From: Gekko japonicus
Lineage: Eukaryota
Direction of reading: 5' to 3'
Length of the DNA: 64,000 nucleotides
Assembly: GCF_001447785.1 (NCBI RefSeq)
Contig: NW_015161507.1
Span: 95,555 to 159,554, forward strand
The translations under genes were made by a program, and so were the position numbers. Of this stretch, positions 10,939-36,524 are shown in pieces (within the stretch, counting starts at the first letter, position 1; the number at the start of each line of letters is the position of its first letter). The notes under the pieces were generated by a model. That model saw only the letters and a list, made by a program, of their open reading frames with translations, ran no database searches and was not told the origin of the DNA.

Positions 10939-11088
10939 ATGGAAGCAAGGACAGAAGCAGGAAACGGGAGGAGTGAGCAATTCTGGGGAAGAATTCGGCA
11001 GACCCTGGAAGAGGCTGTGGGCACCTCAGACGTACAGAGCCAGTTGTTCCAGCAGATCGGCTACCCGGATGCCAAGGGGCCCCAAGAG
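10939..11088 (+). CDS. ZNF gene 2: first coding segment, N-terminal part of SCAN domain
   Basis: Acceptor at 10903-10904; ATG at 10939; SDVQSQLFQQIGYPDAKGPQEVC resembles SCAN N-terminus (RQRFRQFxYQExxGPREVC); the phase-0 donor after 11088 is weak. Confidence 0.7.
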
Positions 11089-12984: not shown

Positions 12985-13192
12985 CAGTGTTCCCTCTAAG
13001 CTGAGTTGGTGTGAGTTGGCTCACAGTTTTTTAGCCTCCGGTTCACACGTTTTTGCCTTTGCTCAGGAAGGAGGGCTCCAGAGCAAGCTAGGTGTTATGC
13101 AGGAGCCAAATTGCTCGCTCACAACTTTAATGCTGGTAGCTCACAAAGTAGAATTTTTGCTCACTAGACTCCACAGCTTAGAGGGAGCCTTG
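12985..13192. mobile_element. hAT-type MITE (208 bp)
   Basis: TIRs cagtgttccctctaagctg / cagcttagagggagccttg; perfect 8-bp TSD cttgtggt. Confidence 0.9.
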
Positions 13193-14900: not shown

Positions 14901-15103
14901 CAGTGTTCCCTCTAATCTGAGTTAGTGTGAGCTAGCTCTCAGTTTTTTAGCCTCTGGCTCACACATTTTTGTCTGAGGAAAGATGGCTCTAGAGCAGACT
15001 AATTTATATGCAGTAGCCAAATCGCTCGCTCACAACTGTAACGCCAGTCGCTCACAAAGTAGACTTTTTGCTCGCAAGACTCCACAGCTTAGAGGGAGCA
15101 TTG
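14901..15103. mobile_element. hAT-type MITE, same family
   Basis: Same TIRs; degenerate 8-bp TSD gacccaac/aactcaac. Confidence 0.85.
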
Positions 15104-15234
15104 AACTCAACAGTTAAGGGGGAGAGAAAGCGACTAAGCCAAGGCCAGCCAGTGAGCTTAATGGCTGAGAGGGCTTTTGAACCAGGGTCATAGTCTGACA
15201 CGTTGATCCTTTGCATGCATGTTTTTGCTATCAG

Positions 15235-15435
15235 TTGCTGCCTGCAGAGAAGCCCGTAAGGAAGCAGATCCTGGAGTTGGTGATCCTGGAGAAGTTCCTG
15301 GCCGTCCTTCCTCAGGAAATGCAGTGCTGGGTCAGGAAGTGCGACCCCGAGACTTACGACCAGGCAGTGGCCCTGGCAGAAGTCTTCCTGTCAAGGCACC
15401 AACAAAAGGAGGAGGAAGTGAAGCAAAGGGAGCAG
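15235..15435 (+). CDS. ZNF gene 2: C-terminal part of SCAN domain
   Basis: [40 protein letters not shown] is the SCAN signature; tcag acceptor at 15234; phase-0 donor cag|gtgaga. Confidence 0.88.
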
Positions 15436-16309
15436 GTGAGAATGCGTTGCCCTTACAGCCCTGAGAGGTGATGGATGAGCATGAAAAGCACCTCTTCTAT
15501 TGAGAAACCTTCAACGTGGGGGATGGCCAAGGCCTAGATGTTGGTCTAAACGTGTCTGAGGTAGCACCACTGCTTGAAGTTAAGCAGACATGTATCTGGT
15601 CAGTCCTCTGAACAGGAAGCTTTTGATCAGCCTCACATAAAAGTTTGGTACAAACAATAATGTGTGGTGTTTTTTTAAGCATTGGCCAACTGCAGATATG
15701 TAGGCCTTGTTGTCCCTTCAAAATAGCTTAAGTGGCCATTGTAAATGTTTATAATGTGGTGGTTGTCAAATATTCTCACCTTTAAACTATTTTAATCCCT
15801 TTGTTTTTTTAATCCCACCCTGCTCAGGGTGGCAGTTGTGGTACTCCCCTCCCCCATCTTGTCTTCCAACAGTGGTCGTGAGGTAAACTTGGCCGAGAGG
15901 CGCCAGGGACTGCCCTCAGGGTCACCCAGTGAGTTCAGTGGCTCAGGATGGGTTTGTACCCAGGCCTCCCTAGTCTAACCACTACTTCCCTGCACTGGGT
16001 CTTAATTTTAAAAAGGAGAGTCCAGTCTGTGTTTGTACTGCTCTGCCAATCTGAACGGGTCTTTCGAGAAGTGGGTTTGTTCTTCTATATCTCCCATCGT
16101 CAACCTTGTGCAGGGAAGACTGACTAAGATTTGTGTTTACGCATACGCTATCCCACTTGCAGCCTTCTGCCAGTCAGGTTGTGCTCTTGAGTCTGTCCCT
16201 GTGAGATATCAGGCTACTAGAAGCCTCTGTTTCGATCAATATCTCTCGGATGTAAGTCTCTGAAAGCCAAAGCTGAAAGTCAGATACATCACAATTTTGA
16301 CTCTTGATA

Positions 16310-16445
16310 AGGGGCTGTGGCTTCGTGGTAAAGCATCTGCTTGCCAGGCAGAAGGCCTGAGGTTCAATCGGCATCTCCAGTTGAAGGACCAAGCAGAAGG
16401 TGGTACGAAAGACCCCTGCCTGAGACCCTGGAGAGCCACTGCTCG
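16310..16445 (+). mobile_element. tRNA-derived SINE head
   Basis: ggggctgtggcttcgtggtaaagc (A box) and ggttcaat (B box), running into the gap. Confidence 0.7.
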
Positions 16446-16905
16446 NNNNNNNNNNNNNNNNNNNNNNNNNNNNNNNNNNNNNNNNNNNNNNNNNNNNNNN
16501 NNNNNNNNNNNNNNNNNNNNNNNNNNNNNNNNNNNNNNNNNNNNNNNNNNNNNNNNNNNNNNNNNNNNNNNNNNNNNNNNNNNNNNNNNNNNNNNNNNNN
16601 NNNNNNNNNNNNNNNNNNNNNNNNNNNNNNNNNNNNNNNNNNNNNNNNNNNNNNNNNNNNNNNNNNNNNNNNNNNNNNNNNNNNNNNNNNNNNNNNNNNN
16701 NNNNNNNNNNNNNNNNNNNNNNNNNNNNNNNNNNNNNNNNNNNNNNNNNNNNNNNNNNNNNNNNNNNNNNNNNNNNNNNNNNNNNNNNNNNNNNNNNNNN
16801 NNNNNNNNNNNNNNNNNNNNNNNNNNNNNNNNNNNNNNNNNNNNNNNNNNNNNNNNNNNNNNNNNNNNNNNNNNNNNNNNNNNNNNNNNNNNNNNNNNNN
16901 NNNNN
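16446..16905. other. Assembly gap (460 N)
   Basis: Run of N, followed by minisatellite-bearing repeat. Confidence 0.98.
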
Positions 16906-17520
16906 GTGTGGCCTAATGTGCTAATGAGCTATGCTCTCATGGGTGTGGCTGGATATGCTAATGAGTTTCTGTTGTTGGGTGTGGCCTATTATGCTAATGA
17001 GTTCCTGCTGGGCTTTTTCTACAAAAAAAGCCCTGCAAATAAGTATGAGATGCAAGTTTTGTATGAGCTGCCATGATGGTTGGTGGTAATGGCTAATTTT
17101 AGAAATGGTTTCTTAAGTTCCTGTTTACTTTGACAACTTTATGGACTGGGTTTTTATTTTATAAAGAGAAGTAAAACAAGTGTCAAGTGACACCTTAAAG
17201 ACTAACAGAAATTTATTCCAGCGTCAGCGTTTGTGAGTGAGAGCTCATTTGATCAGGTACACAAAGTGGACGACCATTAGGCCTCTGATGAATTGAGCTC
17301 TGACTCAGCAAAGTTTATGACGGAATAGATGGTGTTAATCTTTAAGATGTTGCTGGATTCCTAGCTTGGTTATCCATCTGACATTATTTTAAAACTGATT
17401 GTTTATATTGGCTGTCATGTTTATTGTATGGTGAATCACTTTTTGTTTTAAGCATAAAAGAACTCTATACATTTGATAAAGTTAATGATCAGGCGTGGTT
17501 TAAAAAACACCTTCTTGTGA

Positions 17521-17700
<180 letters not shown>

Positions 17701-19374
17701 TGAGGCCTGCATTCCTCTCCTTGAAAATTCCCCACCCCCCTTATACTAGAGTGATGTTGACAATGAAACGGGTTGCTTGTGCCGCATAGCCTTTTCATGT
17801 AACGATTGTTGGGTCAGGCACCAATGTGAGTTTATCCAGCATCTGAGTCGCTTTCATACATGTTGCATAATGCACTTTCAGTGCACTGTGCTGCTGGATT
17901 TTACTGTGTGAAATGGGAAAATCCTCTTGCAAACAATTGCTAAAGTGGATTGAAAGTGCATTATTCCTTGTATCAAAGCATCCTTTGTCTTTTCTAAATA
18001 AGCTTCAAATAAGCTTTTTGAAAACCTGGCTTTAAAAGCAAAGTTGTTCCATAGCTAAGAACTGAATATAGAATTAGTTCCAAAAACTTGCCTTTGGACC
18101 CTTGAAAGCACAACTGAGAACTAAATGCTTCCCTCCCATCCAGAATTTTCTAATAATCAGAGTCCCTTGAATTGTCATGTAGCCTTGTTTCAGATTCTTT
18201 TTTTTAAATTTTATTGTATTGAAGAACTGAATTACAAATAAAGATTACAATTTTAGCTAGTAACATATACGTGTTTCTTACATCACAATGTCTTCTTTTT
18301 TTGGATAGGTGTACATATATGTTTTTAATTGTTTTAAGAATTTACAATAGAAGCTTCTTTTCTTCTGTCTTTTCAGTTCTTCTGTCTTCTCAGTATTAAC
18401 CTATACTGCATTTTAAGCAAAACTTTTCAGCATAGCCACAAAACTAAAACAAAATACACAGGCTCAAAACCAGTCATAGTACTTCTTACTCTATTCTTCT
18501 TTGAACTTGAGTTCAGTCCGAGGGGGGCCCATGTTTCAGATTTTTGAGTAGTTGGGCGGGGCCGGGATCACAACCGTTTTGGATTGCACTTTGCCTAAAT
18601 TCAGACCTCACTTTTAACCTTGGCTAAAGAAAAATGTGTGTGAACCCCATTTAATGCTGGGCTTGCACATATCTTACTCCTTCCCCTTGCCTTCTTGCAT
18701 GTAACTCACTCTGGTGTGAGTTGATGTGCTAATGCAGGTATGCACGTGAACCAGACTTAATCTCCCCTCTCCCACCCCACCTGGGATTCTAAACCAGAGT
18801 TGGTTTGAGGCTTAGAATCCTGGCTGGTGGGGGCTGGGGGTGGTAGAATGAGTTTTCATTTCATGTGCATTGCTGTACATCCTGGGATCTGAAGTTAATT
18901 TCCGTGATTTTTCTGCACAAGAGCATAGTATGCGTGTGACCCTGGCAAAAAGCCATGTGTGCGTGTGTTTATGCACAATTTTCTTAAAGGGAATGTCTGA
19001 AGACATCCCACTGAGTCCTCTCTTTTGAGACAGAAGTGTATAACAGCGCCATCCTAAGCAGAAATGCACCCTGCTGAGTTCGGTGAAGTCAGTGGGCATA
19101 TAATGTCATACAGTGGGCATGTGTGTTTCATATGCACTTCACCACAGCTGTACCGCCATCGCTATGTAAATTGTTTTACTAATTATGTTGTGTTATGTTA
19201 TACTGATATTTATATTGTTATTTTATCTATTGCTTTCTTGTGTAAGCCACCCTGAGCCTGCCTTAGCGGGAAGGGTGGGGTAAAAATCAAATAAATAAAT
19301 AAATAAATAAAATATAAGGGTGTAACTCTGCTTAGGGCTGCGATGCACTGGTTCAGTGTTGAATGGAAAGGGAG

Positions 19375-19580
19375 CAATGTTCCTTCTAAGCTGTGGAGTC
19401 CTGTGAGCAAAAATTCTACTTTGTGAGCCGCTAGCATTGAAGTTGTGAGCAAGCGATTTGACTGCTACATAAATTAGTTTGCTCTGGAGCCCTCCTTCCT
19501 GAGCTAAGACACAAATGTGTGAGCCGGAGGCTAAAAACCTGTGGGCTAGCTCACACTAACTCAGCTTAGAGGGAACACTG
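19375..19580. mobile_element. hAT-type MITE, present in duplicate copy 1 only
   Basis: TIRs caatgttccttctaagctg / cagcttagagggaacactg; TSD aaagggag/gaagggag; single empty site gaagggag in copy 2 (about 21219). Confidence 0.92.
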
Positions 19581-19644
19581 GAAGGGAGTAGGGATAACCG
19601 CTTCTGTGGTGGGTATTGCTGACAATATCCTGATTTTGTCCCAG

Positions 19645-20075
19645 GATATAACACCTGTGTGCTGGAATATGAGGAGAACTGTTGGCAGAAAAGACCCAAA
19701 GAAGCGGATGTTGATGAAAGACTGGTAGAAGGATCTGAAGGGAAATGTTTCTGGGACCCTGCAACGCGGTCAAAGCCTGAAAGAAAGCTGGCGACAGACA
19801 GTCACCAGAACGATCATGAGGAGTATAAACCAAAACTAGCCTTGCTTTGGCGGGAAGATGCTGGGAATGTAGAGACGGACGAAGGACTCCTAAAGCGTGA
19901 AACACAGAGGGACCAAGACTGTGACAACAAATTTTGTCAGAGCGCGACGTTTGTCAGGAATCCACGAATGGCAGAAAAAGCGTATATCTGCTCATGCTGT
20001 GGGCAGATATTCCAAGGGACGTCCGCTTTGCTTGTGCACGAGAGGACTCAAATTGAAGAACTGAATTACAAATAA
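19645..20075 (+). CDS. ZNF gene 2: truncated duplicate of the terminal exon (one finger lacking its last His)
   Basis: Phase-1 acceptor ttttgtcccag; ends HERTQIEELNYK* across the duplication junction. Confidence 0.55.
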
Positions 20076-21282
20076 AGATTGCAATTTTAGCTAGTAACAT
20101 ATACGGGCTTCTTACATCACAATGTCTTCTGTTTTTGGATGGGTGTACATATACGTTTTTAATTGCTTTAAGAATTTACAATAGAAGCTTCTTTTCTTTC
20201 TACTATCTCTTCAGTTCTTCTGTCTTCTCAGTATTAACCTATACTGCATTTTAAGTATTTTAAGCAAAACACTTCAGCATAGCCACAAAACTAAAACAAA
20301 ATACACAGGCTCAAAACCAGTCATAGTACTTCTTACTCTATTCTTCTTTGAACTTGAGTTCAGTCCGAGGGGGGCCCATGTTTCAGATTTTTGAGTAGTT
20401 GGGCGGGGCCGGGATCACAACCGTTTTGGATTGCACTTTGCCTAAATTCAGACCTCACTTTTAACCTTGGCTAAAGAAAAATGTGTGTGAACCCCATTTA
20501 ATGCTGGGCTTGCACATATCTTACTCCTTCCCCTTGCCTCCTTGCATGTAACTCGCTCTGGTTATCCTTGATGTGCTAATGCAGGTATGCAGGTGAACCA
20601 GACTTAATCTCCCCTCCCCCACCCCACCTGAGATTCTAGACCAGAGTTGGTTTGAGGCTTAGAATCTTGGCTGGTGGGGGCTGGGGGGTGGTAGAATGAG
20701 TTTTCGTTCCATGTGCATTTCTGTACATCCTGGGATCTGAAGTTAGTTTCTGTGATTTTTCTGCACAAGAGCATAGTATGCGTGTGACCCTGGCAAAAAG
20801 CCATGTGTGCGTGTGTCTTTATGCACAATTTTCTTAAAGGGAATGTCTGAAGACATCCCACTGAGTCCTCTCTTTTGAGACAGAAGTGTATAACAGCGCC
20901 ATCCTAAGCAGAAATGCACCCTGCTGAGTTCGGTGAAGTCAGTGGGCATATAATGTCATACAGTGGGCATGTGTGTTTCATATGCACTTCACCACAGCTG
21001 TACCGCCATCGCTATGTAAATTGTTTTACTAATTATGTTGTGTGTTATTTTATATTGATATTTATATTGTTGTTTTATCTGTTGCTTTCTTGTGTAAGCC
21101 GCCCTGAGCCTGCCTTGGCGGGAAGGGTGGGGTAAAAATCAAATAAATAAATAAATAAATAAAATATAAGGGTGTAACTCTGCTTAGGGCTGCGATGCAC
21201 TGGTTCAGTGTTGAATGGGAAGGGAGTAGGGATAACCACTTCTGTGGTGGGTATCGCTGACCATATCCTGATTTTGTCCCAG

Positions 21283-22058
21283 GATATAACACCTGTGTGC
21301 TGGAATATGAGGAGAACTGTTGGCAGAAAAGACCCAAAGAAGCGGATGTTGATGAAAGACTGGTAGAAGGATCTGAAGGGAAATGTTTCTGGGACCCTGC
21401 AACGCGGTCAAAGCCTGAAAGAAAGCTGGCGACAGACAGTCACCAGAACGATCATGAGGAGTATAAACCGAAACTAGCCTTGCTTTGGCAGGAAGATGCT
21501 GGAAATGTAGAGTCGGATGAAGGACTCCTGAAGCGTGAAAGAACACAGAGGGACCAAGACTGTGAAAACGAATTTTGTCAGAGCGTGACATCTGTCAGGA
21601 ATCCCCGAATGGCAGAAAAAGCGTATATTTGTTCATGCTGTGGGCAAATATTCCAAGGGACTTCCGCTTTGCTTGTGCACGAGAGGACTCACATAGCAGA
21701 GAGAATATATAAGTGCTCGCAGTGTGGGAGGAACTACTCTTGTCATTCTGACCTCCTTGTGCACCAGAAGAGCCATGCGGGAGAAGACCCACACCGGTGT
21801 GCTTTGGACTGTGGCAAATGCTCTAGTCGGCATGCCCCTCTGCCCCCGCACCAGGGAGCCCATCCGGAAGAGAAGGTAAGCAGGTGCCTCGAGTGCAGGA
21901 AAAGCTTTGGCAGTAAATGGCAGCGCCATCAGCAAAAGAAACCCCATACGAGGGAGAAACAAAATGAGTGCTTAGAATGTGGGGAAAGGTTCAAATGGAA
22001 GGCCTCCCTTGCGAGGCACTCTGTGCTGAGGCAAAGCCTTATGAGAACCATGCTCTGA
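21283..22058 (+). CDS. ZNF gene 2: terminal exon with 2-3 intact and 2 degenerate C2H2 fingers
   Basis: Phase-1 acceptor at 21281-21282; CSCC..HERTH, CSQC..HQKSH and CALDC..HQGAH, then degenerate CLEC units. Confidence 0.8.
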
Positions 22059-22152
22059 GCTTGGGCCCCACATCCATATGGTTTCTAAGTCCACAGAGAG
22101 GAGGGATGTCTTAGCTGCAGTCACCATGAGAGCAGCTTTAGCCAAAGATCCC

Positions 22153-22200
22153 GTTGTTGTTGTTGTTGTTGTTGTTGTTATTATTATTGTTGTTGTTGTT
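22153..22200. repeat. (GTT)n/(ATT)n microsatellite
   Basis: Directly visible. Confidence 0.95.
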
Positions 22201-22616
22201 CCATTCCACCCTGACCAAATCTAAAAGGAGACTTTTGTGGCATCTGCAAGGCCATGACGGATTTATAGTCGCATAAGAGAAAGTAGGGTTCGCTCAGGAA
22301 AACCTATTGCTGCAATAAATCTGCTAGGTTTGGTCATGCACGCAGGAGAATGAAGTGGGGACACCGATGCCCTGAAGGAGTGGCATTCTGGCTCTAGATA
22401 TTTTCTTTTCAGTAGCAAAACAAACCCCACCCTCCACTCTCTGCACGCGAGAAAGCTAGCACAGCAGGGAGAAAAATTCTGTTCTCCTTTTTTACTTGCA
22501 TGCTGGCTTTCTCTTTGCAAGGAGTGATTAATTAATTATCGTATGGCATTGTGTGTAGCATAGACAGGAGATCCTAAGATTGTCTGACAGCCGGAAGCTC
22601 TAGCTCTTTTAGTGGT

Positions 22617-22636
22617 ATGCACCACTAGGGGGCGAG
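22617..22636 (+). promoter_or_regulatory. CTCF-like motif
   Basis: gcaccactagggggcgag matches the CTCF core CCAC/GYAGG/AT/GGGCG. Confidence 0.6.
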
Positions 22637-22658
22637 CTAGACTTGTTTTTAGGCCAGA

Positions 22659-23279
22659 GACAGTTCAGAGCTGGTTTGCCGTTTCCCGCCTCTGCGTAAC
22701 AGCCCTGGTTATTCCTTGGAGGTCGCTCTTCCAGTTCCTAGCCATGGCTGTCCCAGCTTAACTTCCGAGATCTGATGAGACTGAGCTAGCCTGGGCTATC
22801 CCAGTTGGGGGTGTTTAACAAAGGACAGCATTCTCAAATGGTGACGCTCTCCTGCAGTTCGATTTTTTTTTAAAAATGTATATCTTGCGTCTCTCCCTAA
22901 TTGGGACCCAAAATGCCTTACCAGAACATTCTCCTTTGCTCACTCTACAGTCACACCAAGAAACTTGCAAGACAGTTCAGAGCTGGTTTGCCGTTTCCCG
23001 CCTCTGCGTAACAGCCCTGGTTATTCCTTGGAGGTCGCTCTTCCAGTTCCTAGCCATGGCTGACCCAGCTTAACTTCCGAGATCTGATGAGACTGAGCTA
23101 GCCTGGGCTATCCCAGTCGGGGGTGTTTAACAAAGGACAGCAATCTCAAATGGTGATGCTCTCTTGCAGTTTGATTTTTTTTAAAAATGTGTATCTTGCT
23201 TCTCTCTAATTGGGACCCAAAATGCCTTACCATAATATTCTCATTTAATCACTCTACAGTCACACCAAGAAACTTGCAA
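22659..23279. repeat. Tandem duplication of about 311 bp containing an antisense 5S-derived SINE
   Basis: Units start at 22659 and 22971 (gacagttcagagctggtttgcc). Confidence 0.88.
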
Positions 23280-23444
23280 GGTACGTTAGGCTGAGAGAAT
23301 GTGACAGGTCCAAGGTAATCCAGTGAGAGGCAGAGCAGGGATTCAAACCTTGGTTGTCCTTGTTCCACACTCTGATCACTGCACCACACTGGCTCTCAAC
23401 TGCAGTTCTGTTCATAGGGTGTGTGTGTGTATGTATTAGTATTG

Positions 23445-24012
23445 GAAAAGGTGCAGAAAAGGGCAACTAAAAAGATGAAGGGGATGGCACACCTTCCTTA
23501 TGAAGCTTAGGGGTCTTTAGCTTGGAGGAGCGACGGTTGAGGGGTGACATGATAGAGGTTTACAGAATTATGCATGGGATAGAGAAAGAAGTACTTTTCT
23601 CCCTTTCTTACAATACAAAAACTCGTGGGCATTTGGCTGTCCCTGTTCCACAAACCTTGGCTGTCCTTGTTCCACACTCTAATCACTGCAACACAGGCTC
23701 TCAACTGCAGTTCTGTTCATAGGGGTGTGTGTGTATGTATTAGTATTGGAAAAGGTGCAGAAAAGGGCAACTAAAAAGATGAAGGGGATGGTACACCTTC
23801 CTTATGAAGCTTAGGGGTCTTTAGCTTGGAGGAGCGACGGTTGAGGGGTGACATGATAGAGGTTTACAGAATTATGCATGGGATAGAGAAAGAAGTACTT
23901 TTCTCCCTTTCTTACAATACAAAAACTCGTGGGCATTCAATGAAATTAATGAGCAGTAGCCTTAGAACAGATAAAGGAAGTACTTCTTCACCCCAAAGAG
24001 TAATTAACACCT
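23445..24012 (+). mobile_element. CR1 LINE 3' fragment, tandemly duplicated (about 304-bp unit)
   Basis: LEERRLRGDMIEVYRIMHGIEK and TRGHSMKL are CR1 ORF2 C-terminal motifs; present twice. Confidence 0.88.
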
Positions 24013-24092
24013 GTCCAAAGTGCCGCATCACAATCCTTTGCCCCTTCTCCACTTCCCATGACGCTTTAACTGTTTTCCTTTCTGTCTTTCAG

Positions 24093-24872
24093 CCCTCCAT
24101 CTCTGGAATAACAAAGAGGTCAGCCACCACCAAGGAAGTTTCACATGCAAAGATAGGTCTCTCTGAGCCAGATGATAGTGCACCCAAGAGGTTACGGGCT
24201 CAGGGGCGGTTGACAAAGGCAGGCGAGGCGTGGAAATCTGCAGACGGAGCCCAAGAAGACAAGGCACAGGCCGGGGATGCGTTGCGATTGCGGTTCCCTT
24301 GTGGAAAGTGCCGCATCACAATCCTTTGCACCTGCTCCACGTCCCATGATGCTTTACCTGTTTTCCTTTCTGTCTTTCAGCCCTCCATCTCTGGAATAAC
24401 AAAGAGGTCAGCCACCACCAAGGAAGTTTCACATGCAAAGATAGGTCTCTCTGAGCCAGATGATAGTGCACCCAAGAGGTTACGGGCTCAGGGGCGGTTG
24501 ACAAAGGCAGGCGAGGCGTGGAAATCTGCAGACGGAGCCCAAGAAGACAAGGCACAGGCCGGGGATGCGTTGCGATTGCGGTTCCCTTGTGGAAAGGGAA
24601 AGAAAACGGCTGACTGCAGCGTCAGTGACGTGGATGACGCGTTCTCCGTGGCTGACCGGTATCTTCCTGCTGCTCCTTCCTCTGACGACGATGCCCCTTC
24701 CTCACCTTGCAGATCGATCGCCAGCTCTCTTGACTCCTCGCTGAAAGATGAGCATGTGACCCACCCTCTGGAGCACGCTGCTGGCATCGAGGTGGGAACA
24801 CTCCCTGTTCTGAAATCTGAACAGGTTCATCATAGGCAGGAGGAGTTCAGTGTGGAACACGGCACACCTTCA
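24093..24872 (+). CDS. Putative upstream coding exon of the hAT/ZBED gene (low-complexity N-terminal region, includes 288-bp duplication)
   Basis: Strong acceptors ttttcctttctgtctttcag at 24092 and 24380 (both phase 0); open frame; phase-0 donor tca|gtgagt at 24872. Confidence 0.5.
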
Positions 24873-24876
24873 GTGA

Positions 24877-27588
24877 GTGGAACAGACAATGACAGAGTCG
24901 CTGGGGATACCGTGGTACATTCCAGTATCACGGCAGTCCACGCGAAAGATGCAGCATGCTCTGATCCTCCGTACTCAACATGGTCAGACCCTGCACAAAT
25001 GCCGCCATCTAGCAATGAAAGCACCCCCCTCAGTTTCCACACAAGCAACATGGTCGGACCCTGTGCAAATGCCACCATCTAGTGATGAAAGCACCCCCCT
25101 CAGTTTCCACACAAACTTCCACCAGGAAAAAAGGGCAGAGTCAATGCAGACACCTCAGGCCTTCATAAGGAACACCGCGAGTGAAATCTGTGCGCCCGCA
25201 GAAGGGTGCCCGGCTGTCTCCGGCATCTTCATGCGACAGAGGAAGAATGCATCCTACGTGTGGAAGTTCTTCCGCCGTGCGCCCAACGATAGATTCGTGG
25301 TCGTTTGTCAGGAGTGCCACGCGAGGGTGCGTCTTGGGAAGGAGAATGGATGTGGAAAGGTCGGCACTTCGGCAATGAGGAAGCACATGGAGGTGCATCA
25401 CTCGAACCTCATTCCTCAGCAGCAGGGCGTGGCTGACTTTGGGGCGGCCGGTGCAGCCAGCAAAGTAGCGATAGAGGCTTCCACGGCTGAGCAGATGTAC
25501 CATTCTCCAGGAGGACAGTCTTCCTCGCCATCTTCCGCGATGTGTCACCAGCTTAACATCGAGGAATCGTTTTGCCTCAAGGCCCCCGTCGGTGTGTCAA
25601 CTCTTCAGGCAGCTCACTACACCCGTGGCGTGGCCGCATACCTTGCCGAAGCGATGCTTCCGTTCAGCACGGTGGAGGAAAGGTCGTTCGTCGATCTTTG
25701 TGCAGCCTTCGCACCACAGTGGAGGATTCCATCCAGACGCTATTTTGCCACAAAGGTCATTCCGGCATTGGCAGAAGACATTAAGGGAGCCGTGTGCCGA
25801 GGCATGCAGAGAGCCGTAGGGCGGGTAGTGCACTTCACCAGCGGTGTGTGGACGAGCAGTCGGGACGAGTGTTACCTTTGCGTCACGGCACACTGGGTGG
25901 GGTGCAATGCCGTGGGAGCGCTTGAGCACTGGGACGCCACTCTGGTTCTGGAGCCGTTGACACAGAAGCACGCCGCTAACCACGTCTTGACTGAACTGCG
26001 GTCCTTGGTGGAGGAGTGGCTGTCTCCCCTCAGTCTGAGACTGGGGAGCATCACGACCGGCAACGGTTCGATCTATGTGAAGGCTTTCCGAAATGCAGCC
26101 TTTTGCCACATCCGATGCATAGCTCACTGCTTGAACCTGGTGGTGACGGCAGCGTTACAGCTGGCGCCGGCGTGTGTCAGGACAGTCGTGGACCTGGCAT
26201 GCAAAATTGTTGGTCACTTCCACAACTCTAGCAACGCACAGGAAGCCTTGAGAAGGATTCAGGTGAGGAGAGGCGTTCCTCAGCATAGGCTTCGCCGAGA
26301 GGTTGGCGTACATTGGAACGGCACTCTGCACATGCTCCAGAGACTGTGCGAGCAGAAGGAGGCCGTTAATGAGTATGTGTGCAAGAAGGACTACGGCAAC
26401 CTCCAAGTCCGCCCTGATCAATGGGTTTTAATGCACAACATTGCAGATTTACTGTACTCCTTTGACGAGTGCACGGGACTTTTGAGCCACAGCGATGCCA
26501 CTCTGGGGACGGTTCTCCCTGTGATCCATGTGATAACAGCTGACGTTCAGGAGAAAATAGCCTCCTTTGCTAGTGGCCCCATGGCATCCCTGCCATCAGT
26601 GGCCTTCGGGAACACGGTGCTCAAGCAACTGACCAAAAACAAGCAGCTGCGCGCCATGTCTGTCAGCGTCAGGTACCACGCAGCCACGTTTCTCGATCCA
26701 CGGTTCAGAGACAAAATCAGGAGCTACCTGGGGGAGAGTGCGGAAGAGAATTACAATGCGTTGCATGCCTACATTTTGGAGCAGACGACGCCCTACTGCC
26801 GCGAGCGAGCTGCGAACGCGCGGCGTGCCGAGTCTGTGGCGGGGGAAGAGATCGTGTCCCAGGACAGACTTTTCTTTGAAAGAGCCCTGCAGAACAGCCA
26901 AAGCTCCGTCTTCTCGAGAGGAGTCCTAAAACTGGGTCTCTGTGGTCCTACACCCCGCCCAGTCAGGCAAAACACATTCCTCGAGCAGGAGCCCGAGGTC
27001 AGCGCCCAACAAGAACTCGAAGCGTATGTCAGCGACGAGATTCCGGTGGAGTTCTTGCTGCCCGACAGCAACCCATTGCATTATTGGGAAGGAAAGTGCG
27101 GCGTGTGGCCGTGCCTGTCTTCCGTGGCCATCAGTACACTGGCCTGCCCTCCGACTAGCATTCCCTCTGAGCGCCTTTTCTCCACTTCCGGCAAAGGCGT
27201 GGCAAAGCTTCGGACCCAGCTGTCTCCCGCTGGTGTTTCCGCTCTGTCCTTTGTACGGTCAAATAAAAAATGGATCCCGAGCGAGCACTGCCCTCCAGAA
27301 TGCACCAGTGACGATTACGCACCACCTCCGCCTGCTGATGCCACCGTGGCGGAGTACAGCCTGGATGAAGAGGATGCTGTCTCTGTTATACTGGAGCCGC
27401 TTGTGCCTAACGAAGCGATCCCGAGCGAGCACTGCCCTCCAGAATGCACCAGTGACGATTACGCACCACCTCCGCCTGCTGATGCCACCGTGGCGGAGTA
27501 CAGCCTGGATGAAGAGGATGCTGTCTCTGTTATACTGGAGCCGCTTGTGCCTAACGAAGCGTCCTGTGAGCTGGAGGAAGATGTGTGA
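24877..27588 (+). CDS. hAT-family transposase-derived ZBED-like protein (BED finger, RNase H-like core, hATC dimerisation motif), probably catalytically inactive
   Basis: SYVWKFF..CQEC..GTSAMRKHMEVHH (BED); LPFSTVE..F; IPSRRYF; RCIAHCLNLVV (CxxH); HWNGT; ATFLDPRF; PLHYW; PPTSIPSERLFS. True start unresolved (ATG at 25144 or spliced entry at 25126). Confidence 0.93.
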   Translation: MEQTMTESLGIPWYIPVSRQSTRKMQHALILRTQHGQTLHKCRHLAMKAPPSVSTQATWSDPVQMPPSSDESTPLSFHTNFHQEKRAESMQTPQAFIRNTASEICAPAEGCPAVSGIFMRQRKNASYVWKFFRRAPNDRFVVVCQECHARVRLGKENGCGKVGTSAMRKHMEVHHSNLIPQQQGVADFGAAGAASKVAIEASTAEQMYHSPGGQSSSPSSAMCHQLNIEESFCLKAPVGVSTLQAAHYTRGVAAYLAEAMLPFSTVEERSFVDLCAAFAPQWRIPSRRYFATKVIPALAEDIKGAVCRGMQRAVGRVVHFTSGVWTSSRDECYLCVTAHWVGCNAVGALEHWDATLVLEPLTQKHAANHVLTELRSLVEEWLSPLSLRLGSITTGNGSIYVKAFRNAAFCHIRCIAHCLNLVVTAALQLAPACVRTVVDLACKIVGHFHNSSNAQEALRRIQVRRGVPQHRLRREVGVHWNGTLHMLQRLCEQKEAVNEYVCKKDYGNLQVRPDQWVLMHNIADLLYSFDECTGLLSHSDATLGTVLPVIHVITADVQEKIASFASGPMASLPSVAFGNTVLKQLTKNKQLRAMSVSVRYHAATFLDPRFRDKIRSYLGESAEENYNALHAYILEQTTPYCRERAANARRAESVAGEEIVSQDRLFFERALQNSQSSVFSRGVLKLGLCGPTPRPVRQNTFLEQEPEVSAQQELEAYVSDEIPVEFLLPDSNPLHYWEGKCGVWPCLSSVAISTLACPPTSIPSERLFSTSGKGVAKLRTQLSPAGVSALSFVRSNKKWIPSEHCPPECTSDDYAPPPPADATVAEYSLDEEDAVSVILEPLVPNEAIPSEHCPPECTSDDYAPPPPADATVAEYSLDEEDAVSVILEPLVPNEASCELEEDV
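27273..27560 (+). repeat. Exact 144-bp (48-aa) in-frame tandem duplication in the acidic C-terminal tail
   Basis: IPSEHCPPEC...PLVPNEA occurs twice. Confidence 0.95.
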
Positions 27589-31090: not shown

Positions 31091-33664
31091 TTATTTTATA
31101 GCCCCTGCGCCTTCAGCCAAAATCGCCGGCTCCCGGAGCAGGTTGCACCAATTCCTAAGGGATGCAATTATCCACTGAAATAGGCTGGGTGTGCTGGGAA
31201 GGGTGTCCGGATGCCGCCTTGTGTCCCTCCGACTTCAGGGGGGCGAGGGATGTGGGCAGGGTGGAGTGAGTTCAAGGGACTCCGAGCATCGATGGAGGAA
31301 AGCCGGCGACGGTGATTTGGAGGGGGGCGGTTCAATGGATGACTCGCTTGCTGTGCACGCAGAAGGTCTTGTCCCTGGTAGCTCCACTTAAATGGTTTTT
31401 CTCTGTCTCCAGAGGGGTGGCAGTAAGAATAAAGAGGTGTCTAGTGATGCTTTAAAGACTACTTTATTTGAGAACAGAGTCCAGTGACCAACGAAGTTTT
31501 ATTCAGGGGATGGGGTGGGTGGGTTGCCAGATCCATGTTGGGCAACTCCTGGAGAATTGGGGGGCGGCGCCTGGGGAGGACAGCGGCCTCAGCGGGGTAC
31601 AATGCCACAGAATCCACCCACCAAAGCATCCATTTTCTCCAGGGGAACTGATCTCTGTAGTCCGGAGATGAGCTGTAATTCCAGGGGGTCCCACCTGGAG
31701 GCTGGCATACCTATATTATCACACCTTATTCTTGCATAAGTTTTTTCTGGAGCCAGCACTCCCTTCATCAGATGCGCTTCTCTACCTGAAGATCGTTTCA
31801 AGGGGTTTGCCATGCTGATCTGCAGGTATCCGATGAAATGAGACTGGACTCCTGAAAGCTCGCATACCCTGAAATTATTGTTGGTCTCTAAGGTGCTACT
31901 GGATTCGAATCTAGCCCAAACCGCCAAGAGATCCACCGGTTTGTGTGGAGGTGGTCTCGGGTTCAGTCCCTGCTGGCTCTCCAGGTTAAAAAGGCTCCTG
32001 GGTGTTGGGAAAGAATGAAGGACCTTGCTCTGCCCAAGGCCCTGGGGAGCAGCTGCGAGTCAAAGTAGACTGTTGTGATGTGAAAGAGCTTGATTCGAAT
32101 CCAGTAGCACCTTCTCCTGAGTGGGGTGTAAAAAGGGGCAGTGAGGGACAAAAAAGTACAAGGAGGCATATTGTAGTGGGGAGAGAGTCAGTTTGGTGTA
32201 GTGGTCAAGTGCGTGGACTCTAATCTGGGAGAACCGGGTTTGATTCCCCACTCCTCCACTTGCAGCTGCTGGATGACCTTGGGCAAGCCATAGTTCTGAC
32301 AAGAGCTGTCCTTGAAAGGGCAGTTCTCTCAGAGCTCTCTCAGCCCCACCCACCGCATCATCAGATCTTGGAAGCTGAGCAGGGTCAGTCCTAGCTAGTA
32401 CTTGGGTGAGAGACCACCAAAGAAGTGGCTGCACAGAGGCAGGCAGTGGCAAACCACCTTCTCTTGCCTTGGAAACCCTATGGGGTCATTGTAAGTCAGG
32501 TGTGACTTGACGGCACTTTCCATCGAGGGTCACAATGGAGCAGGTGTGGCTCCAGGAACAACCTGAGAGTCCCAAGCCACAGAATGAAGGCTTACTAGGC
32601 TAACTTACCTCACAGGGTTGCGGTGAGGACAAAATGGGGGGGAGGAAAATGCAAGCCCTTCACACCTCACAGGGTTGCGGTGAGGACAAAATTGGGGGGA
32701 GGAAAACGCAGGCCCACAGAGGAAGGACAGGATAAAACTGCTGGGTATCTAGGTAGACAGAACATGCCCACCACTATCTCGGGGGCCCTTGGCCTCCTGG
32801 TAGCAGATGTGCTGGAATGACTGGCTATGTGAGTGTGAGGCAACCATGTCCTCTGCCAGGATTTGCTAAATTCTTCCCCAGAATTCCTCACGGCTCCTGT
32901 TTTATGCCTCCTTCCTGGCTTCCATTTTTACACCCCATTTCCCTTAATGCCGTGGCATTTGTGGACGCCACTGTGGGGAACCCTATCACAGAGCTTCTGC
33001 TAAATCCTAAAGCAGCATGATGTCACTGGGCTTGGCCCATAATTATGCCGTTGCCATGATGGTGATTTTTAGTATTATTTTTACTCCTGCCAGCCTACCA
33101 AATGGCAGCAGGAAGTTGTAAGAACACAAGAAGAGCCCTGCTGGATCAGACTGGTAGCTCCACCAGCATCCTGTCCCACACAGTGGCTGACTAGGTCCTC
33201 TGGAGGGCCAACAACAGGGCATAGAGGCTGAGGCCTTCTGTTGATGTAGCCTCCTGGCTCTGGGATTCAGAGGATTAATGCCTCTGAATGGGCAGGTTCC
33301 CCTCAGCCACCATGGCTAGTTGTCACTGATAGACCTATCCTCCATGAATCTACCCACATTTTAGTCACTTTCTGTTTAAAGTAGTATTTCCTTCTGTTCA
33401 TCCTGAACCTACTGTCCATCAATTTCATTGGATGCCCTCAAGTTCTAGTATTTTGGGAGAGGGAGAAAAAATTGTCATCTCTCTCTGCTTCATGCATAAT
33501 TTTATAAACCTCTAATGTCCCCACTTAGTCATCTCTTTTCTAAACTGAAAAGTCCCAGACTCTTCAGCCTTTCCTCATAGGGAAGGTGCTCCAACCCCCT
33601 AATCATTGCCAGCTATAGTGGGCAACCTGGCAGGCCTAACTCTTCCGAATTGTTTAACCATTAG

Positions 33665-33835
33665 GGGCTGATGGCAGACAAGCACACACAGAAGCAGATC
33701 CTGGAGAAGTTCCTGGCCGCCCTTCCCCAGAAAATGCAGTCCTGGCTCAGGAAGTGTGGCCCTGAGATGTATGACCAGGCAGTAGCCCTGGCAGAAGGCT
33801 TTCTGTTCAAGCAACAGCAAGAGGAGAGGAAGCAG
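33665..33835 (+). pseudogene. ZNF gene 3: partial SCAN exon (C-terminal half, 15-nt internal deletion)
   Basis: [38 protein letters not shown]; branch point cctaac plus ttag acceptor; donor cag|gtgaga as in gene 2. Confidence 0.75.
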
Positions 33836-34946
33836 GTGAGAATGCATTGTCCTTATGGTTCCAAGAGTTACTGAGTGTGCATGAGAATAGCCTTCAGTTG
33901 ATGGCCACATGCTGCAAAGGTAGGTTCAGAACAATGCTTCTGTGTATTCCACTAATACCCAGGGCTATTTTTGGGCAGGGACGCACAGGAACGGAGTTCC
34001 GGCTGGCTCCTGAGTTGGCCACGCCCAGCAGGAACTCATTAACATAATAGGCCACACCTAACAGCAGACACTCATTAGGATTGGCTACATTAGGGGTGTG
34101 TGGCCTAACATGCAAAGACGTTCCTGCTACAAAAAAAGCCCAGGGTTTTGACAACAAAGTAAACAGAATAAGAAGCAAAAGTTGGGTGTGGTTGGATGAC
34201 CACACTTCTGGTAACATTTGGGGTGTGGCCTAATATGCTAATGGGTTTCTGCTGTTGGGTGTGGCCTATTATGCTAATGAGTTCCTGCTGGGCTTTTTCT
34301 TCAAAAAAAGCCCTGCTAATACCCAGTGTGATTCCCAAGGTTGGCACCCATATGTTTTCTGATGTCCACTGGCTCCTTCCCCGAGGCATCGCTCCCTAAA
34401 GCAATGAGCCAACCTAGCTTTTCTCCACCTTACTGGAGAAGGAGGTGTCTCACAAGAGCCACTTCCCATGTCTCCATGGCCACCATTTTGTTGTGGTGCC
34501 TGCTACCTGTTCTCAGAATTCCAGAAGTGTCTACAGGCTCAGCGAGGCTGAGGACCACGGTTATGTCCAGCTTTCTGCCAGTCAGGCCTGGTTCTGGATT
34601 CCATCACATTGAATATCAAGCTGTCACGTACCAGGAGCCAACACGTTAAGAGGTTCTTGCCAAGCTTTTAATGGCCTCTGAAGAGCTTTCAGTGTCATCT
34701 GGTGGTCTTCATAACTTTTGATTTCTAGTAGTAATGGCTCATTTGGTTAAGTGGGAAGTCTGAGTTGAAATTTGACGGTTTTGTGGATTGGAGTTTTATT
34801 TTTTAAGATGAAATGAAACGGGAGCACCTTAAAGATCAGCCACGTTCATTCTGGCATAAGCTTTTCCTAGTTGGAGTTCACTTCATCAGATGCATTTGGG
34901 ATGTATATCACCTAGGTGTCTGAAGACATGAGCACTCACTCATGAA

Positions 34947-35522
34947 TCATAGAATAGAATCATAGAGTTGGAAGGTACCTCTGGGGTCATCTAGTCCACC
35001 CCCCTGCACAATGCAGGAAATTCACAAATACCTCCCCCCCATATCCCCAGTGACTGCTGTTCCACGCCCAGAAGATGGCAAAAAAAAAAAAAAAAAAACC
35101 TCCAGGATCCCTAGCCAAAGTTGCCTGGAGAAAATTTTTCCTGACCCCAAAGTGTCGATCAGCATTTCCCTGGACATGTAAGGAAGGGCCACAAGAACTA
35201 AGCACTGATGCAACCCTTCCCGCCCTCCCTCTCATGATCTGCCTAAGTTCACAGAATCAGCATTGCTGTCAGATGACCATCTAGCCTCTGCTTGAAAACC
35301 TCCACAGAAGGAGAGCCCACCACCTCCCGAGGGAGCCTGTTCCTCTGAGGAACCACTCGAACTGTCAGGAAGTTCTTCCTAATGTTTAGCCGAAAACTCC
35401 TCTGATTTAATTTCAACCTGTTGGTTCTGGTCCGACCTTCTGGGGCAACAGAAAACAACTCCGCACCATCCTCTGTATGACAGCCCTTCAGGTACTTGAA
35501 GATGGTTATCGTGTCACCTCTC
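34947..35522 (-). mobile_element. CR1 LINE 3' end
   Basis: Reverse (attctat/gattct) tail; RTRTNRLKLNQRSFRLNIRKNFLTVRVV is CR1 ORF2 C-terminus. Confidence 0.9.
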
Positions 35523-35572
35523 CATATGAAAGCTTAGGCTGGAATAAATTTGAGTAGGCCTTCATGGCCTTG

Positions 35573-35780
35573 ACCTGGATGGCCTGGGCTAGCCTGATCT
35601 TGTCAGATTGTGGCTGCTAAGCAGGGTTGGCCCTGGTTGGTACTTGGATGGGAGACCAGCAGCAGGGAAGCCCAGGGTCTCTGTGCAGAGGTGGGCAATG
35701 GCAAATTGCCTCTGTTTTTCCTTTGCCCTCAAAACCCTATGGGGTCGCCATAAGTCAGCTGCCACTTGCCGGCACTTTCC
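35573..35780 (+). mobile_element. 5S rRNA-derived SINE
   Basis: gcctgatcttgtcagat..gctaagcagggttggccctggttggtacttggatgggagacc resembles 5S rRNA; further copy at about 32357-32520. Confidence 0.75.
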
Positions 35781-35788
35781 GCCACCAT

Positions 35789-36096
35789 TAGGGCTGCCAA
35801 GTGGGGGCGGGTGGCGGGTAAACCCCCGCTTTGGAGGCCCGATTTCCGCCGCCATGGAATCGGGCCCCGGGGGGAACTCCGCCCCCCGAAGCGCAGCGTG
35901 GCTGCGTCACCGGAGGTGACACAACCATGTCGATCACGTTGGGGGCATGGCCCTGATCGTCGGAGGGAAAACTCAACGTGATGGACGTCGCGCGTCACTT
36001 CCGGTGGCGTGCTTGCGGCACGTGCTTACCACCGGACGGCTCCCGGAGCCCGGCGAGGCTCCCCCGCCAGTAAGAAATTTAGACTTGGCAACCCTA
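35789..36096. mobile_element. Young CpG-rich hAT MITE
   Basis: TIRs tagggctgccaagt / acttggcaacccta; perfect 8-bp TSD gccaccat. Confidence 0.92.
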
Positions 36097-36293
36097 GCCA
36101 CCATCAATCTTTAAGGTGCCACTGGACTTCTGTTATGTTTTGTTGCTACAAACATGGCTGCCCATCTGGAATTATTCTATAACTGATCGATTGTTTCTAT
36201 TGGCTGTGGTGTCTATGATTTGGTGAACCCCCTTAATTGTTTTTCTCACATAAAAGTAGTCCATAGATGTGATAAATAAAATAAACAGTCTGA

Positions 36294-36524
<231 letters not shown>

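What the first reader, a model, noticed from the sequence alone, without database searches (positions are those of the whole stretch)
25144..27588. hAT transposase with both catalytic aspartates changed to glycine but an intact ORF, BED finger and dimerisation motif
Seen: the first-D motif (usually xTxDxWTS) reads FTSGVWTS, the second-D motif (usually VTDN) reads ITTGNGS, and TRWNS reads VHWNG. CxxH, the SER glutamate and the BED Cys/His are kept over more than 800 stop-free codons. Known: hAT transposases need a DDE triad, while domesticated ZBED proteins act as DNA-binding regulators. Inference: targeted loss of catalysis with no disabling mutation points to domestication, or to a dominant-negative repressor of hAT mobility.
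Basis: partly seen in the sequence, partly recalled or inferred. Interest (0 to 1): 0.85.

Follow-up and report, generated by a model that had tools for sequence, protein, structure and literature searches.

The report
Catalytically dead hAT transposase in gecko gene
The open reading frame is not a free transposon but the last exon of a gecko gene that joins SCAN, KRAB and zinc-finger domains to a captured hAT transposase, which geckos have kept while its cutting site decayed; this is a new example of a known way of making regulators.

Summary
ORF 25144-27588 (+) has 814 stop-free codons. It carries a BED finger and a hAT dimerisation domain, and its predicted fold matches the Hermes transposase. 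Sequence alignment to Hermes and a 62-protein alignment place Gly at both catalytic Asp positions (codons 25843-45 and 26059-61). The Glu, the RW tryptophan and CxxH are kept. Contigs from other individuals show the same two Gly codons.

It is not a stand-alone element. RNA joins 21875 to 24381, so the ORF is the end of the last exon of a SCAN-KRAB-C2H2-BED-hAT gene (10939-27588). Orthologues of 1206-1356 aa exist in Paroedura, Eublepharis and Sphaerodactylus (79-85% identity), and their tree follows the species tree.

The first Asp is gone in all four geckos (G/A). The second is D, D, N or G, so it was lost later and more than once. The BED finger is 98-100% identical. Within-species variants listed are 16 synonymous to 7 non-synonymous (p = 4e-5).

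Domestication is supported. KRAB-mediated repression guided by the BED finger is inferred. This is a new member of the known host-transposase fusion genes.

A 70-bp tandem duplication breaks the frame in this assembly. Read data and other scan notes on this genome suggest an artefact or a rare allele. The scan had already noted the fusion and the duplication on this window.

The parts
10939..11088 (+). Exon 1: start codon and the N-terminal part of the SCAN region. It is followed by gt.
   Evidence: tblastn with P0001 residues 1-50, 90% identity. ATG and the gt donor seen.
15232..15435 (+). Exon 2: second half of the SCAN domain (approximate borders, cag|...|gtgaga).
   Evidence: Pfam SCAN 62.2 bits, profile positions 37-89. 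tblastn.
17533..17667 (+). Exon 3: KRAB A box (approximate borders).
   Evidence: Pfam KRAB 89.2 bits, profile positions 1-42.
21282..21875 (+). Exon 4: linker plus two C2H2 fingers. It ends ...HPEEK at a gtaagc donor that lies inside what reads on as a degenerate finger-coding frame.
   Evidence: Pfam zf-H2C2_2 and zf-C2H2 below cut-off. Donor confirmed by the RNA joint 21873->24379, cut +2. RNA depth falls to 0 after the donor.
21876..24380 (+). Intron 4 (GT..AG), full of repeats (LINE tail, 304- and 312-bp tandem duplications).
   Evidence: Joint seen in an X1 contig and in one read each of RNA runs X21 and X22.
24012..24587 (+). 288-bp two-copy tandem duplication (98% identity) that holds the acceptor and the first 207 bases of exon 5. 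RNA uses the second acceptor (24381).
   Evidence: In DNA run X9 depth over the first copy is 8 against about 52 beside it, and a contig starts to fit exactly at 24305 with 27 unfitting letters before it.
24381..25143 (+). Exon 5, linker part (PSISG...), poorly conserved (54-65% to the orthologues). In this assembly its frame ends at a stop at 25080-25082.
   Evidence: No Pfam family found.
24976..25115 (+). 70-bp two-copy tandem duplication (91% identity) that shifts the frame between the linker and the BED-hAT part. The orthologues have one copy.
   Evidence: An X1 contig joins the flank 24945-24974 directly to the second copy. Of the 6 differing bases, 3 are in codons whose amino acid is unchanged and 3 are in two codons that change it (A/V, N/D), by my reading.
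25144..27588 (+). BED-hAT open reading frame of the finding (814 codons plus stop), which is the rest of exon 5.
   Evidence: AlphaFold model pLDDT 80. Best Foldseek matches are Hermes, target-normalised TM 0.70-0.76, E = 1e-17.
25255..25401 (+). BED zinc finger, 98-100% identical among the four geckos.
   Evidence: Pfam zf-BED. Motif alignment. Domain identities.
25843..25845 (+). Position of the first catalytic Asp (Hermes D180): ggt = Gly. It is G/G/A in the other geckos.
26059..26061 (+). Position of the second catalytic Asp (Hermes D248): ggc = Gly. It is D/N/D in the other geckos.
27169..27171 (+). Catalytic Glu position (Hermes E572): gag = Glu, kept in all four geckos.
27013..27264 (+). 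hAT C-terminal dimerisation domain, 83-91% identical among the geckos.
   Evidence: Pfam Dimer_Tnp_hAT 44.6 bits. Domain identities.
27273..27560 (+). 144-bp in-frame two-copy tandem duplication (100% identity) in the acidic C-terminal tail. The orthologues have one copy.
   Evidence: 48-49 window residues are absent from each orthologue.

Best explanation
The ORF is the transposase-derived C-terminal module of a gecko-lineage host-transposase fusion gene. Its domain order is SCAN, KRAB, two C2H2 fingers, linker, BED finger, hAT RNase-H-like domain with its all-alpha insertion, hAT dimerisation domain and an acidic tail.

A hAT element of the Ac/ZBED6-like branch was captured behind a SCAN-KRAB zinc-finger gene. 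A donor inside the old finger exon (21875) is spliced to an acceptor 763 bases upstream of the old transposase start (24381).

The nuclease is dead. The first catalytic Asp was lost before the four gecko lineages split. The second then drifted (D, D, N, G).

Selection keeps the BED finger, which is almost invariant, together with the fold and the dimerisation domain.

Shown: the anatomy, the splicing, the orthology, the loss of the Asp residues and the signs of constraint. Inferred: the protein works as a sequence-specific, multimeric repressor. In that reading the BED finger and C2H2 fingers choose the DNA sites, the hAT C-terminal and SCAN domains mediate oligomerisation, and KRAB recruits the TRIM28/KAP1 silencing machinery.

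The frame break by the 70-bp duplication is most likely an assembly artefact or a minor allele.
For: - Orthologues: three gecko proteins of 1206-1356 aa at 79-85% identity carry SCAN, KRAB, C2H2, BED and hATC.
- Exons: all exons are found in order on the + strand of the window with canonical splice sites.
- Splicing: the joint 21875|24381 (GT..AG) is seen in an X1 contig and in RNA reads of X21 and X22. RNA depth stops at the donor, whereas DNA depth does not.
- Fold and catalytic positions: Hermes is the best structural match, and the Asp positions are fixed by two independent alignments.
- Tree: the gecko clade has 100% support with topology (Eublepharis,(Sphaerodactylus,(window,Paroedura))). 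Its stem is long (0.83) and its tips short (0.09-0.17).
- Neutral simulation: drift to 85% or 80% protein identity left no stop-free sequence in 300 runs each.
- Domain identities: BED 98-100%, hATC 83-91%, linker 70-79%, tail 55-71%.
- Polymorphism: among the variants listed by read laying, 16 are synonymous and 7 non-synonymous, against 72% non-synonymous expected (binomial p = 3.6e-5).
- Precedent: KRAB-hAT and SCAN-transposase fusions are catalogued by Cosby et al., bioRxiv 10.1101/2020.05.07.082677.
Against: - In this assembly the 70-bp duplication puts a stop at 25080-25082 between the host part and the BED-hAT part. As written, the fusion protein cannot be made.
- The polymorphism list is partial: 33 rows were not shown.
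- No binding, repression or KAP1 data exist.
- The C2H2 matches are below Pfam's cut-offs.
- RNA depth is low (about 1-20 reads), and only two raw reads plus one contig show the joint.
Confidence: 0.78

Rival explanations
1. The gene is domesticated in geckos in general, but in this species it was recently broken. The 70-bp duplication is real and fixed, so the SCAN-KRAB-C2H2 part ends at 25082 and the BED-hAT ORF is a young relic that has not yet collected stops.
For: The duplication and the stop are in the assembly. The copies differ at 6 of 70 bases, so it is not a trivial copy error. The same gene carries further two-copy duplications (288 bp, 144 bp, about 1.8 kb).
Against: - A contig of another individual joins the upstream flank straight to the second copy, which is the in-frame single-copy form.
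- The 288-bp duplication also looks single-copy in DNA run X9.
- Variants within the species are 16 synonymous to 7 non-synonymous in the BED-hAT frame, which suggests that constraint still acts.
- Of the 6 differences between the 70-bp copies, 3 lie in codons whose amino acid is unchanged in the true frame, as expected of two working alleles.
- Unchecked scan notes report many frameshifting tandem duplications in conserved genes of this genome, which points to a systematic artefact.
Confidence: 0.14
2. The BED-hAT part is made on its own from the conserved ATG at 25144, either from an internal promoter or by re-initiation. It would then act as a KRAB-less DNA-binding protein, for example a dominant-negative partner or competitor of active hAT transposases.
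For: The Met at 25144 is conserved in all four geckos and lies where homology to other hAT transposases begins. With the duplication as assembled, this is the only way to translate the ORF. Scan notes report hAT MITEs and Pack-hAT elements elsewhere in this genome (unchecked).
Against: RNA coverage is continuous from exon 5's acceptor across the linker into the ORF, and no pile-up of read starts was reported (tables 2 and 6). The ATG context is weak (t at -3, c at +4). The orthologues are annotated as one long frame. No cognate active element is known in geckos. The nearest DDE-intact relatives come from unnamed Logan assemblies, amphibians, a turtle and a tick-clade protein.
Confidence: 0.06
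3. It is an ordinary inactive copy of a hAT transposon that happens still to be open.
For: It has the sequence and fold of a hAT transposase with a broken DDE triad.
Against: There is one copy in the window and no terminal inverted repeats beyond chance-level 13-14-mers. Orthologues at 79-85% identity exist in three other genera, with a tree that follows the species tree. Neutral simulations never stayed open. The ORF is spliced to host exons.
Confidence: 0.02

Closest known systems
[quoted passage not shown]
   Same: A transposase exon is captured by splicing behind KRAB and/or SCAN exons of a zinc-finger gene. The transposase DNA-binding domain is kept, and the gene is conserved across a clade.
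   Different: I found no gecko SCAN-KRAB-C2H2-BED-hAT entry in that paper's table. Here all three host modules (SCAN, KRAB, C2H2) are combined with a nearly full-length transposase. The donor lies inside the former finger exon. The function of this gene is untested, whereas KRABINER was tested.
Canonical vertebrate ZBED genes (ZBED1, ZBED4, ZBED6; Hayward et al. 2013, PMC3606216)
   Same: They are hAT-derived, with BED finger(s), a catalytic-like domain with the alpha-helical insertion, and a hAT dimerisation domain. They act as DNA-binding regulators. NCBI names one orthologue 'ZBED4-like'. Mammalian ZBED6 (P0066) falls on the same large branch of the tree.
   Different: It is not an orthologue: identity to ZBED6 is about 22%, and the gecko clade is nested among reptile, amphibian and tick hAT sequences. 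Hayward et al. report that the DDE triad is conserved across the domesticated ZBEDs. Here the first Asp is lost in all four geckos and the second in two. The canonical ZBEDs have no SCAN or KRAB.
Hermes transposase (PDB 4d1q, 6dwz, 8sjd, 2bw3)
   Same: The overall fold matches over about 570 aligned columns, with target-normalised TM 0.70-0.76. The BED, CxxH, RW and SER motifs align.
   Different: Sequence identity is 16-20%. Both catalytic Asp residues are replaced by Gly. There are no transposon ends. The protein is fused to host domains.
Iguanian relatives: Sceloporus undulatus LOC121921799 (SCAN + BED + hATC, 1430 aa), Sceloporus 'ZBED4-like', Phrynocephalus RING + BED + hATC
   Same: They form the sister clade to the gecko genes (100% support). 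They are 35-40% identical over the BED-hAT part, are fused to host domains, and each has lost at least one residue of the triad (DDK, HYE, ANK).
   Different: There is no linker homology, and no KRAB is detected in the Sceloporus protein. Whether one ancient squamate capture or several captures gave rise to them is open.

Membership tests
hAT transposase superfamily (by descent) | N-terminal BED zinc finger | tested here: met
   Pfam zf-BED 26.9 bits, above the 20.6 cut-off. The Cys/His columns are invariant or nearly so.
hAT transposase superfamily (by descent) | RNase-H-like catalytic domain split by a large all-alpha insertion, with a Hermes-like fold | tested here: met
   AlphaFold model pLDDT 80, pTM 0.74. 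Foldseek top hits are all Hermes, E = 1e-17, target-normalised TM 0.70-0.76.
hAT transposase superfamily (by descent) | C-terminal hAT dimerisation domain | tested here: met
   Pfam Dimer_Tnp_hAT 44.6 bits, above the 21.4 cut-off.
Active hAT transposase or autonomous element | Intact DDE catalytic triad | tested here: not met
   The triad reads G, G, E in the window, and A/G/G, D/N/D, E/E/E in the orthologues. Of the non-gecko relatives, 36 of 58 keep D, D, E.
Active hAT transposase or autonomous element | Terminal inverted repeats with an 8-bp target-site duplication; several copies | tested here: not met
   Only chance-level 13-14-nt inverted matches around the ORF. No second copy in the window. 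Genome-wide copy number could not be tested.
Host-transposase fusion gene (transposase capture) | Transposase-derived and host domains in one spliced transcript | tested here: met
   The joint 21875|24381 is seen in an X1 contig and in RNA reads. Host exons with SCAN, KRAB and C2H2 lie upstream on the same strand. Caveat: the frame is broken by the 70-bp duplication in this assembly.
Host-transposase fusion gene (transposase capture) | Orthologues in related species under purifying selection | tested here: inconclusive
   Protein-level evidence is strong: species-tree topology, short tips, 0/300 neutral simulations open, and a 16:7 synonymous excess among variants.
Canonical ZBED1/4/6 orthologue | Falls inside the clade of that gene; DDE conserved as reported for ZBEDs | tested here: not met
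   Mammalian ZBED6 lies outside the clade of reptile, amphibian and tick sequences that holds the gecko genes. Hayward et al. report a conserved DDE triad in ZBEDs, which is not the case here. True ZBED1 and ZBED4 sequences were not in my tree.
KRAB zinc-finger repressor | KRAB A box | tested here: met
   Pfam KRAB 89.2 bits over the full profile (positions 1-42) in exon 3.
KRAB zinc-finger repressor | Binds TRIM28/KAP1 and represses transcription | not testable with these tools
   Inference from the family only.

The most novel reading that the evidence does not exclude
The fusion protein uses its almost invariant BED finger to recognise the ends or subterminal repeats of its own former hAT family, including the hAT MITEs that scan notes report in this genome, and brings KRAB/TRIM28 silencing to them. 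That would make it a transposase turned into a repressor of its own relatives, and over time a hub that wires nearby genes into a gecko-specific network. It would also be a natural demonstration that a hAT-derived regulator can do without the DDE triad, which canonical ZBEDs conserve.
Probability: 0.2. Interest if true: 0.65.

Novelty: new member of a known kind. Interest (0 to 1): 0.42.

Why it matters
Transposase capture behind KRAB or SCAN exons is a known, recurrent route to new vertebrate transcription factors. Few cases keep a nearly full-length transposase with a datable, stepwise decay of the active site.

This gecko gene shows the order of events. The first Asp is already lost in all four geckos sampled, and the second then drifted independently in two of them. 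Meanwhile the BED finger, the fold and the dimerisation domain stayed under constraint.

That contrasts with the canonical ZBED genes, where the DDE triad is reported as conserved. Here selection appears to act on DNA binding and assembly rather than on any leftover chemistry.

The case also carries a practical warning. This assembly holds many two-copy tandem duplications that break frames, so gene calls from it need checking against reads.

Tried and rejected
- **Search for an in-frame single-copy product:** I searched with the piece 25045-25899 for protein fragments from other assemblies of this species that would show the single-copy form. It found nothing. This says little, given the tool's length filter and the short contigs.
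- **Tree building:** the treekit mixture-model search did not finish in 300 s, so the tree is FastTree only. Deep nodes are unsure, but the gecko clade and its sister are starred.
- **Candidate GT-AG intron around the 70-bp duplication (scan note s1-814621):** no joint is listed there. RNA depth over 24934-25132 is not lower than beside it, and contigs of the run with spliced contigs (X1) enter the duplicated units. I rejected it as the main route, but the low depth does not exclude it.
- **Transposon ends:** only chance-level inverted matches were found.
- **Rfam over 9000-30000:** only a tRNA-like match in an intron.
- **Dating the 70-bp duplication:** all six differing bases sit at positions where CA or TG in one copy could derive from CG, with no other change in 70 bases. 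Simple in-place decay does not fit this, so I gave no age.
- **Spliced model:** I searched the exons one by one by reference. I did not make or search the joined coding sequence. No stretch written N was filled.
- **Complex prediction:** I ran no job, because no claim here rests on a specific protein pair.
Full report
**1. The observation**

The ORF listing gives a 903-codon open frame at 24877..27588 on the + strand. From the ATG at 25144 it has 814 codons. Pfam finds a BED finger and the hAT C-terminal dimerisation domain, both above their curated cut-offs.

The phmmer alignment to the Hermes transposase gives these pairings:
- Hermes ATIDLWTD (D180) with FTSGVWTS.
- FVTDRGAN (D248) with ITTGNGS.
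- CSSH with CIAH.
- TRWNST with VHWNGT.
- SERTFS (E572) with SERLFS.

A 62-protein MAFFT alignment of relatives found by an exhaustive HMMER search agrees. Among 58 non-gecko relatives the three columns are D in 47, D in 48 and E in 48, and 36 keep the whole triad. The window has G (residue 234, ggt 25843-45), G (residue 306, ggc 26059-61) and E (residue 676, gag 27169-71).

An AlphaFold model built on that alignment has mean pLDDT 80 and pTM 0.74. Residue 234 lies in predicted strand 228-237, and residue 306 lies just after strand 299-305. Its best Foldseek matches are all Hermes structures, with E = 1e-17 and target-normalised TM 0.70-0.76.

Contigs of a DNA run (X9) and of a run that holds spliced contigs (X1), both from other individuals of the same species label, cover both Gly codons. 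No difference is listed there.

**2. What surrounds it**

The only close homologues are three gecko proteins:
- Paroedura picta, 1356 aa, 85% identity.
- Eublepharis macularius, 1347 aa, 80%.
- Sphaerodactylus townsendi, 1206 aa, 79%, named 'ZBED4-like'.

They are much longer than the ORF and carry SCAN, KRAB, C2H2, BED and hATC. tblastn places all their parts in order on the + strand of the window:
- 10939-11088: start codon and the first part of the SCAN region.
- 15232-15435: SCAN, 62 bits.
- 17533-17667: KRAB, 89 bits.
- 21282-21875: linker and two C2H2 fingers.
- 24381-27588: the last exon.

Domain scores are, and the splice sites are canonical. I searched the exons one by one by reference and did not build the joined sequence.

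Laid reads show the joint 21875|24381 (GT..AG) in a contig of run X1 and in one raw read each of RNA runs X21 and X22. RNA depth drops to zero just after the donor, while DNA depth continues. The donor sits inside a frame that would otherwise read on through degenerate fingers to a stop. The captured exon has therefore replaced the end of an old finger exon. The window is part of a cluster of SCAN-KRAB zinc-finger genes.

**3. History of the active site**

- The first Asp position reads G (window), A (Paroedura), G (Eublepharis) and G (Sphaerodactylus).
- The second reads G, D, N and D.
- The Glu, the RW tryptophan and CxxH are kept in all four, apart from SEC in place of SER in Sphaerodactylus.

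A FastTree phylogeny unites the four with 100% support. The order is (Eublepharis,(Sphaerodactylus,(window,Paroedura))), which to my knowledge is the accepted order of these gecko families. The stem is 0.83 long and the tips are 0.09-0.17.

So the first Asp was lost before these lineages split. The second was lost later and twice independently. That is the pattern expected when an already dead site is released from constraint, not a targeted double change.

The sister clade consists of iguanian lizard genes fused to SCAN or RING, or with no host domain detected. Each has lost at least one residue of the triad (DDK, HYE, ANK). The DDE-intact relatives are unnamed Logan assemblies, a Bombina family with several near-identical copies, a turtle gene and one tick-clade protein (P0015). 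The named Ixodes and Dermacentor proteins read DEE and EEE. True mammalian ZBED6 lies further out.

**4. Constraint**

Four substitutes point the same way.

- **Neutral simulation.** Random substitution of the window's ORF down to 85% or 80% protein identity gave on average 5.7 and 7.5 stops. None of 300 runs at either level stayed open. All four species nevertheless have an open frame, with almost no indels apart from the 48-residue duplication.
- **Domain identities.** Identity follows function: BED 98-100%, hATC 83-91%, insertion domain 79-84%, RNase-H-like part 76-81%, internal linker 70-79%, tail 55-71%. The linker upstream of the ORF is only 54-65% identical.
- **Polymorphism.** Among the differences from the assembly that read laying listed in four runs of the species, 16 are synonymous and 7 non-synonymous in the BED-hAT frame. 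About 72% non-synonymous would be expected from random change (binomial p = 3.6e-5). In the upstream linker the count is 2 to 4. The list is partial, since 33 rows were not shown, but rows were chosen by support and not by coding effect.
- **Copy number and ends.** The window holds one copy and no transposon ends.

**5. The frame break**

In this assembly a 70-bp two-copy tandem duplication (24976-25115, 91% identity) shifts the frame. The host part then ends at a stop at 25080-25082, and the BED-hAT part is in another frame. The orthologues have one copy, and removing one copy restores a single frame.

The evidence that the duplication is not general is as follows.
- A contig of run X1 joins the upstream flank (24945-24974) directly to the second copy, and X1's long contig ends exactly at 24974, as at a fork between two forms.
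- The neighbouring 288-bp duplication, which includes the acceptor, looks single-copy in DNA run X9. Depth is 8 over the first copy against about 52 beside it, and a contig starts to fit exactly at the first base of the second copy.
- Of the six differences between the 70-bp copies, three lie in codons whose amino acid is unchanged in the true frame (tca/tcg, ccg/cca, agc/agt), as between two working alleles (my reading).
- Unchecked scan notes list very many frameshifting two-copy tandem duplications in conserved genes of this same genome, and the window holds several more.

I therefore put about 70-75% on an assembly artefact or a minor allele, perhaps two haplotypes written in tandem, and about 15% on a real, fixed break. 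I could lay reads only once, so this stays open.

A candidate GT-AG intron around the duplication (scan note s1-814621) finds no support. No joint is listed, and RNA depth there is not lower than beside it.

**6. How it most likely works**

Shown: the architecture, the splicing, the dead triad, and the constraint on the BED finger, the fold and the dimerisation domain.

Inferred from what is established for these domains: the BED finger, with the two C2H2 fingers, chooses DNA sites. The hAT C-terminal domain and SCAN mediate oligomerisation. KRAB recruits TRIM28/KAP1 to silence chromatin. The RNase-H-like body is kept as a scaffold.

Whether the targets are relics of the cognate hAT family is unknown. 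Scan notes report hAT MITEs in this genome, but I did not test any link.

**7. Comparison with what is known**

The kind is known. Cosby et al. (bioRxiv 10.1101/2020.05.07.082677) describe recurrent capture of transposase domains by host genes. KRAB is the most frequent partner, and hAT supplies 23% of cases. Their table lists KHATD1 (turtles), KHATD2 (Anolis), ZNF862 and ZBED9, but I found no gecko SCAN-KRAB-BED-hAT entry in it. Three further paper searches found no description of this gene.

Hayward et al. (PMC3606216) report that the DDE triad is conserved across the canonical ZBEDs. This gene differs from them in that respect and is not their orthologue.

**Verdict:** a real feature, correctly seen, and a new member of a known kind. 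Interest is moderate.

Noticed in passing
window 3338-3477, 22658-23280, 23344-23937, 24012-24587, 24976-25115, 27273-27560, 32607-32715, 44698-44811, 46301-46564, 56185-56342: There is an unusual number of exactly two-copy tandem duplications (periods 57-312 bp, 78-100% identity) in one 64-kb window. Together with scan notes of many frameshifting duplications in conserved genes of this genome, this suggests a systematic assembly artefact, possibly two haplotypes written in tandem.
   Followed up: partly
window 19000-20072 versus 20850-21713: A segment of about 1.1 kb that holds the acceptor and the first half of exon 4 is present twice, 1.6-1.85 kb apart, at 92-98% identity. The upstream copy (19644-20072) also matches the orthologues' proteins.
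   Followed up: no
window 32776-36458 and 47942-55844: There are paralogous SCAN and KRAB exons: a SCAN-like exon on the minus strand at 32776-32925, SCAN at 33668-33826, KRAB at 36327-36458 (95% identical to the Paroedura KRAB) and KRAB at 47942-48073. A long C2H2 array follows (84-bp unit, 40.5 copies, 52436-55844). The fusion gene sits in a SCAN-KRAB zinc-finger cluster.
   Followed up: no
window 24672: Contigs of two other runs carry a 9-base in-frame insertion (AGGAGCCCA) behind 24672 in the linker part of exon 5. This is either a length polymorphism or an omission in the assembly.
   Followed up: no
window 23340-24137: Very high read depth in all runs, and reads that run on into other sequence, mark a high-copy repeat in intron 4. 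Its translation (…RRLRGDMIEVYRIMHG…) looks to me like the tail of a LINE reverse transcriptase. The weak Pfam 'IATP' match of the ORF at 23826-25082 is probably spurious.
   Followed up: no
window 16311-16379 and 16446-16905: A tRNA-like match (Rfam tRNA, 36.5 bits), probably a SINE head, lies next to a run of N in the intron between the SCAN and KRAB exons. I left the N run untouched.
   Followed up: no
P0004 (Sceloporus undulatus LOC121921799) and P0005 (Phrynocephalus forsythii): The sister clade of the gecko gene holds further fusions of the same hAT lineage to other host domains (SCAN alone; RING), each with its own loss in the DDE triad. This is either one old squamate capture that was later reshuffled or several captures.
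   Followed up: partly
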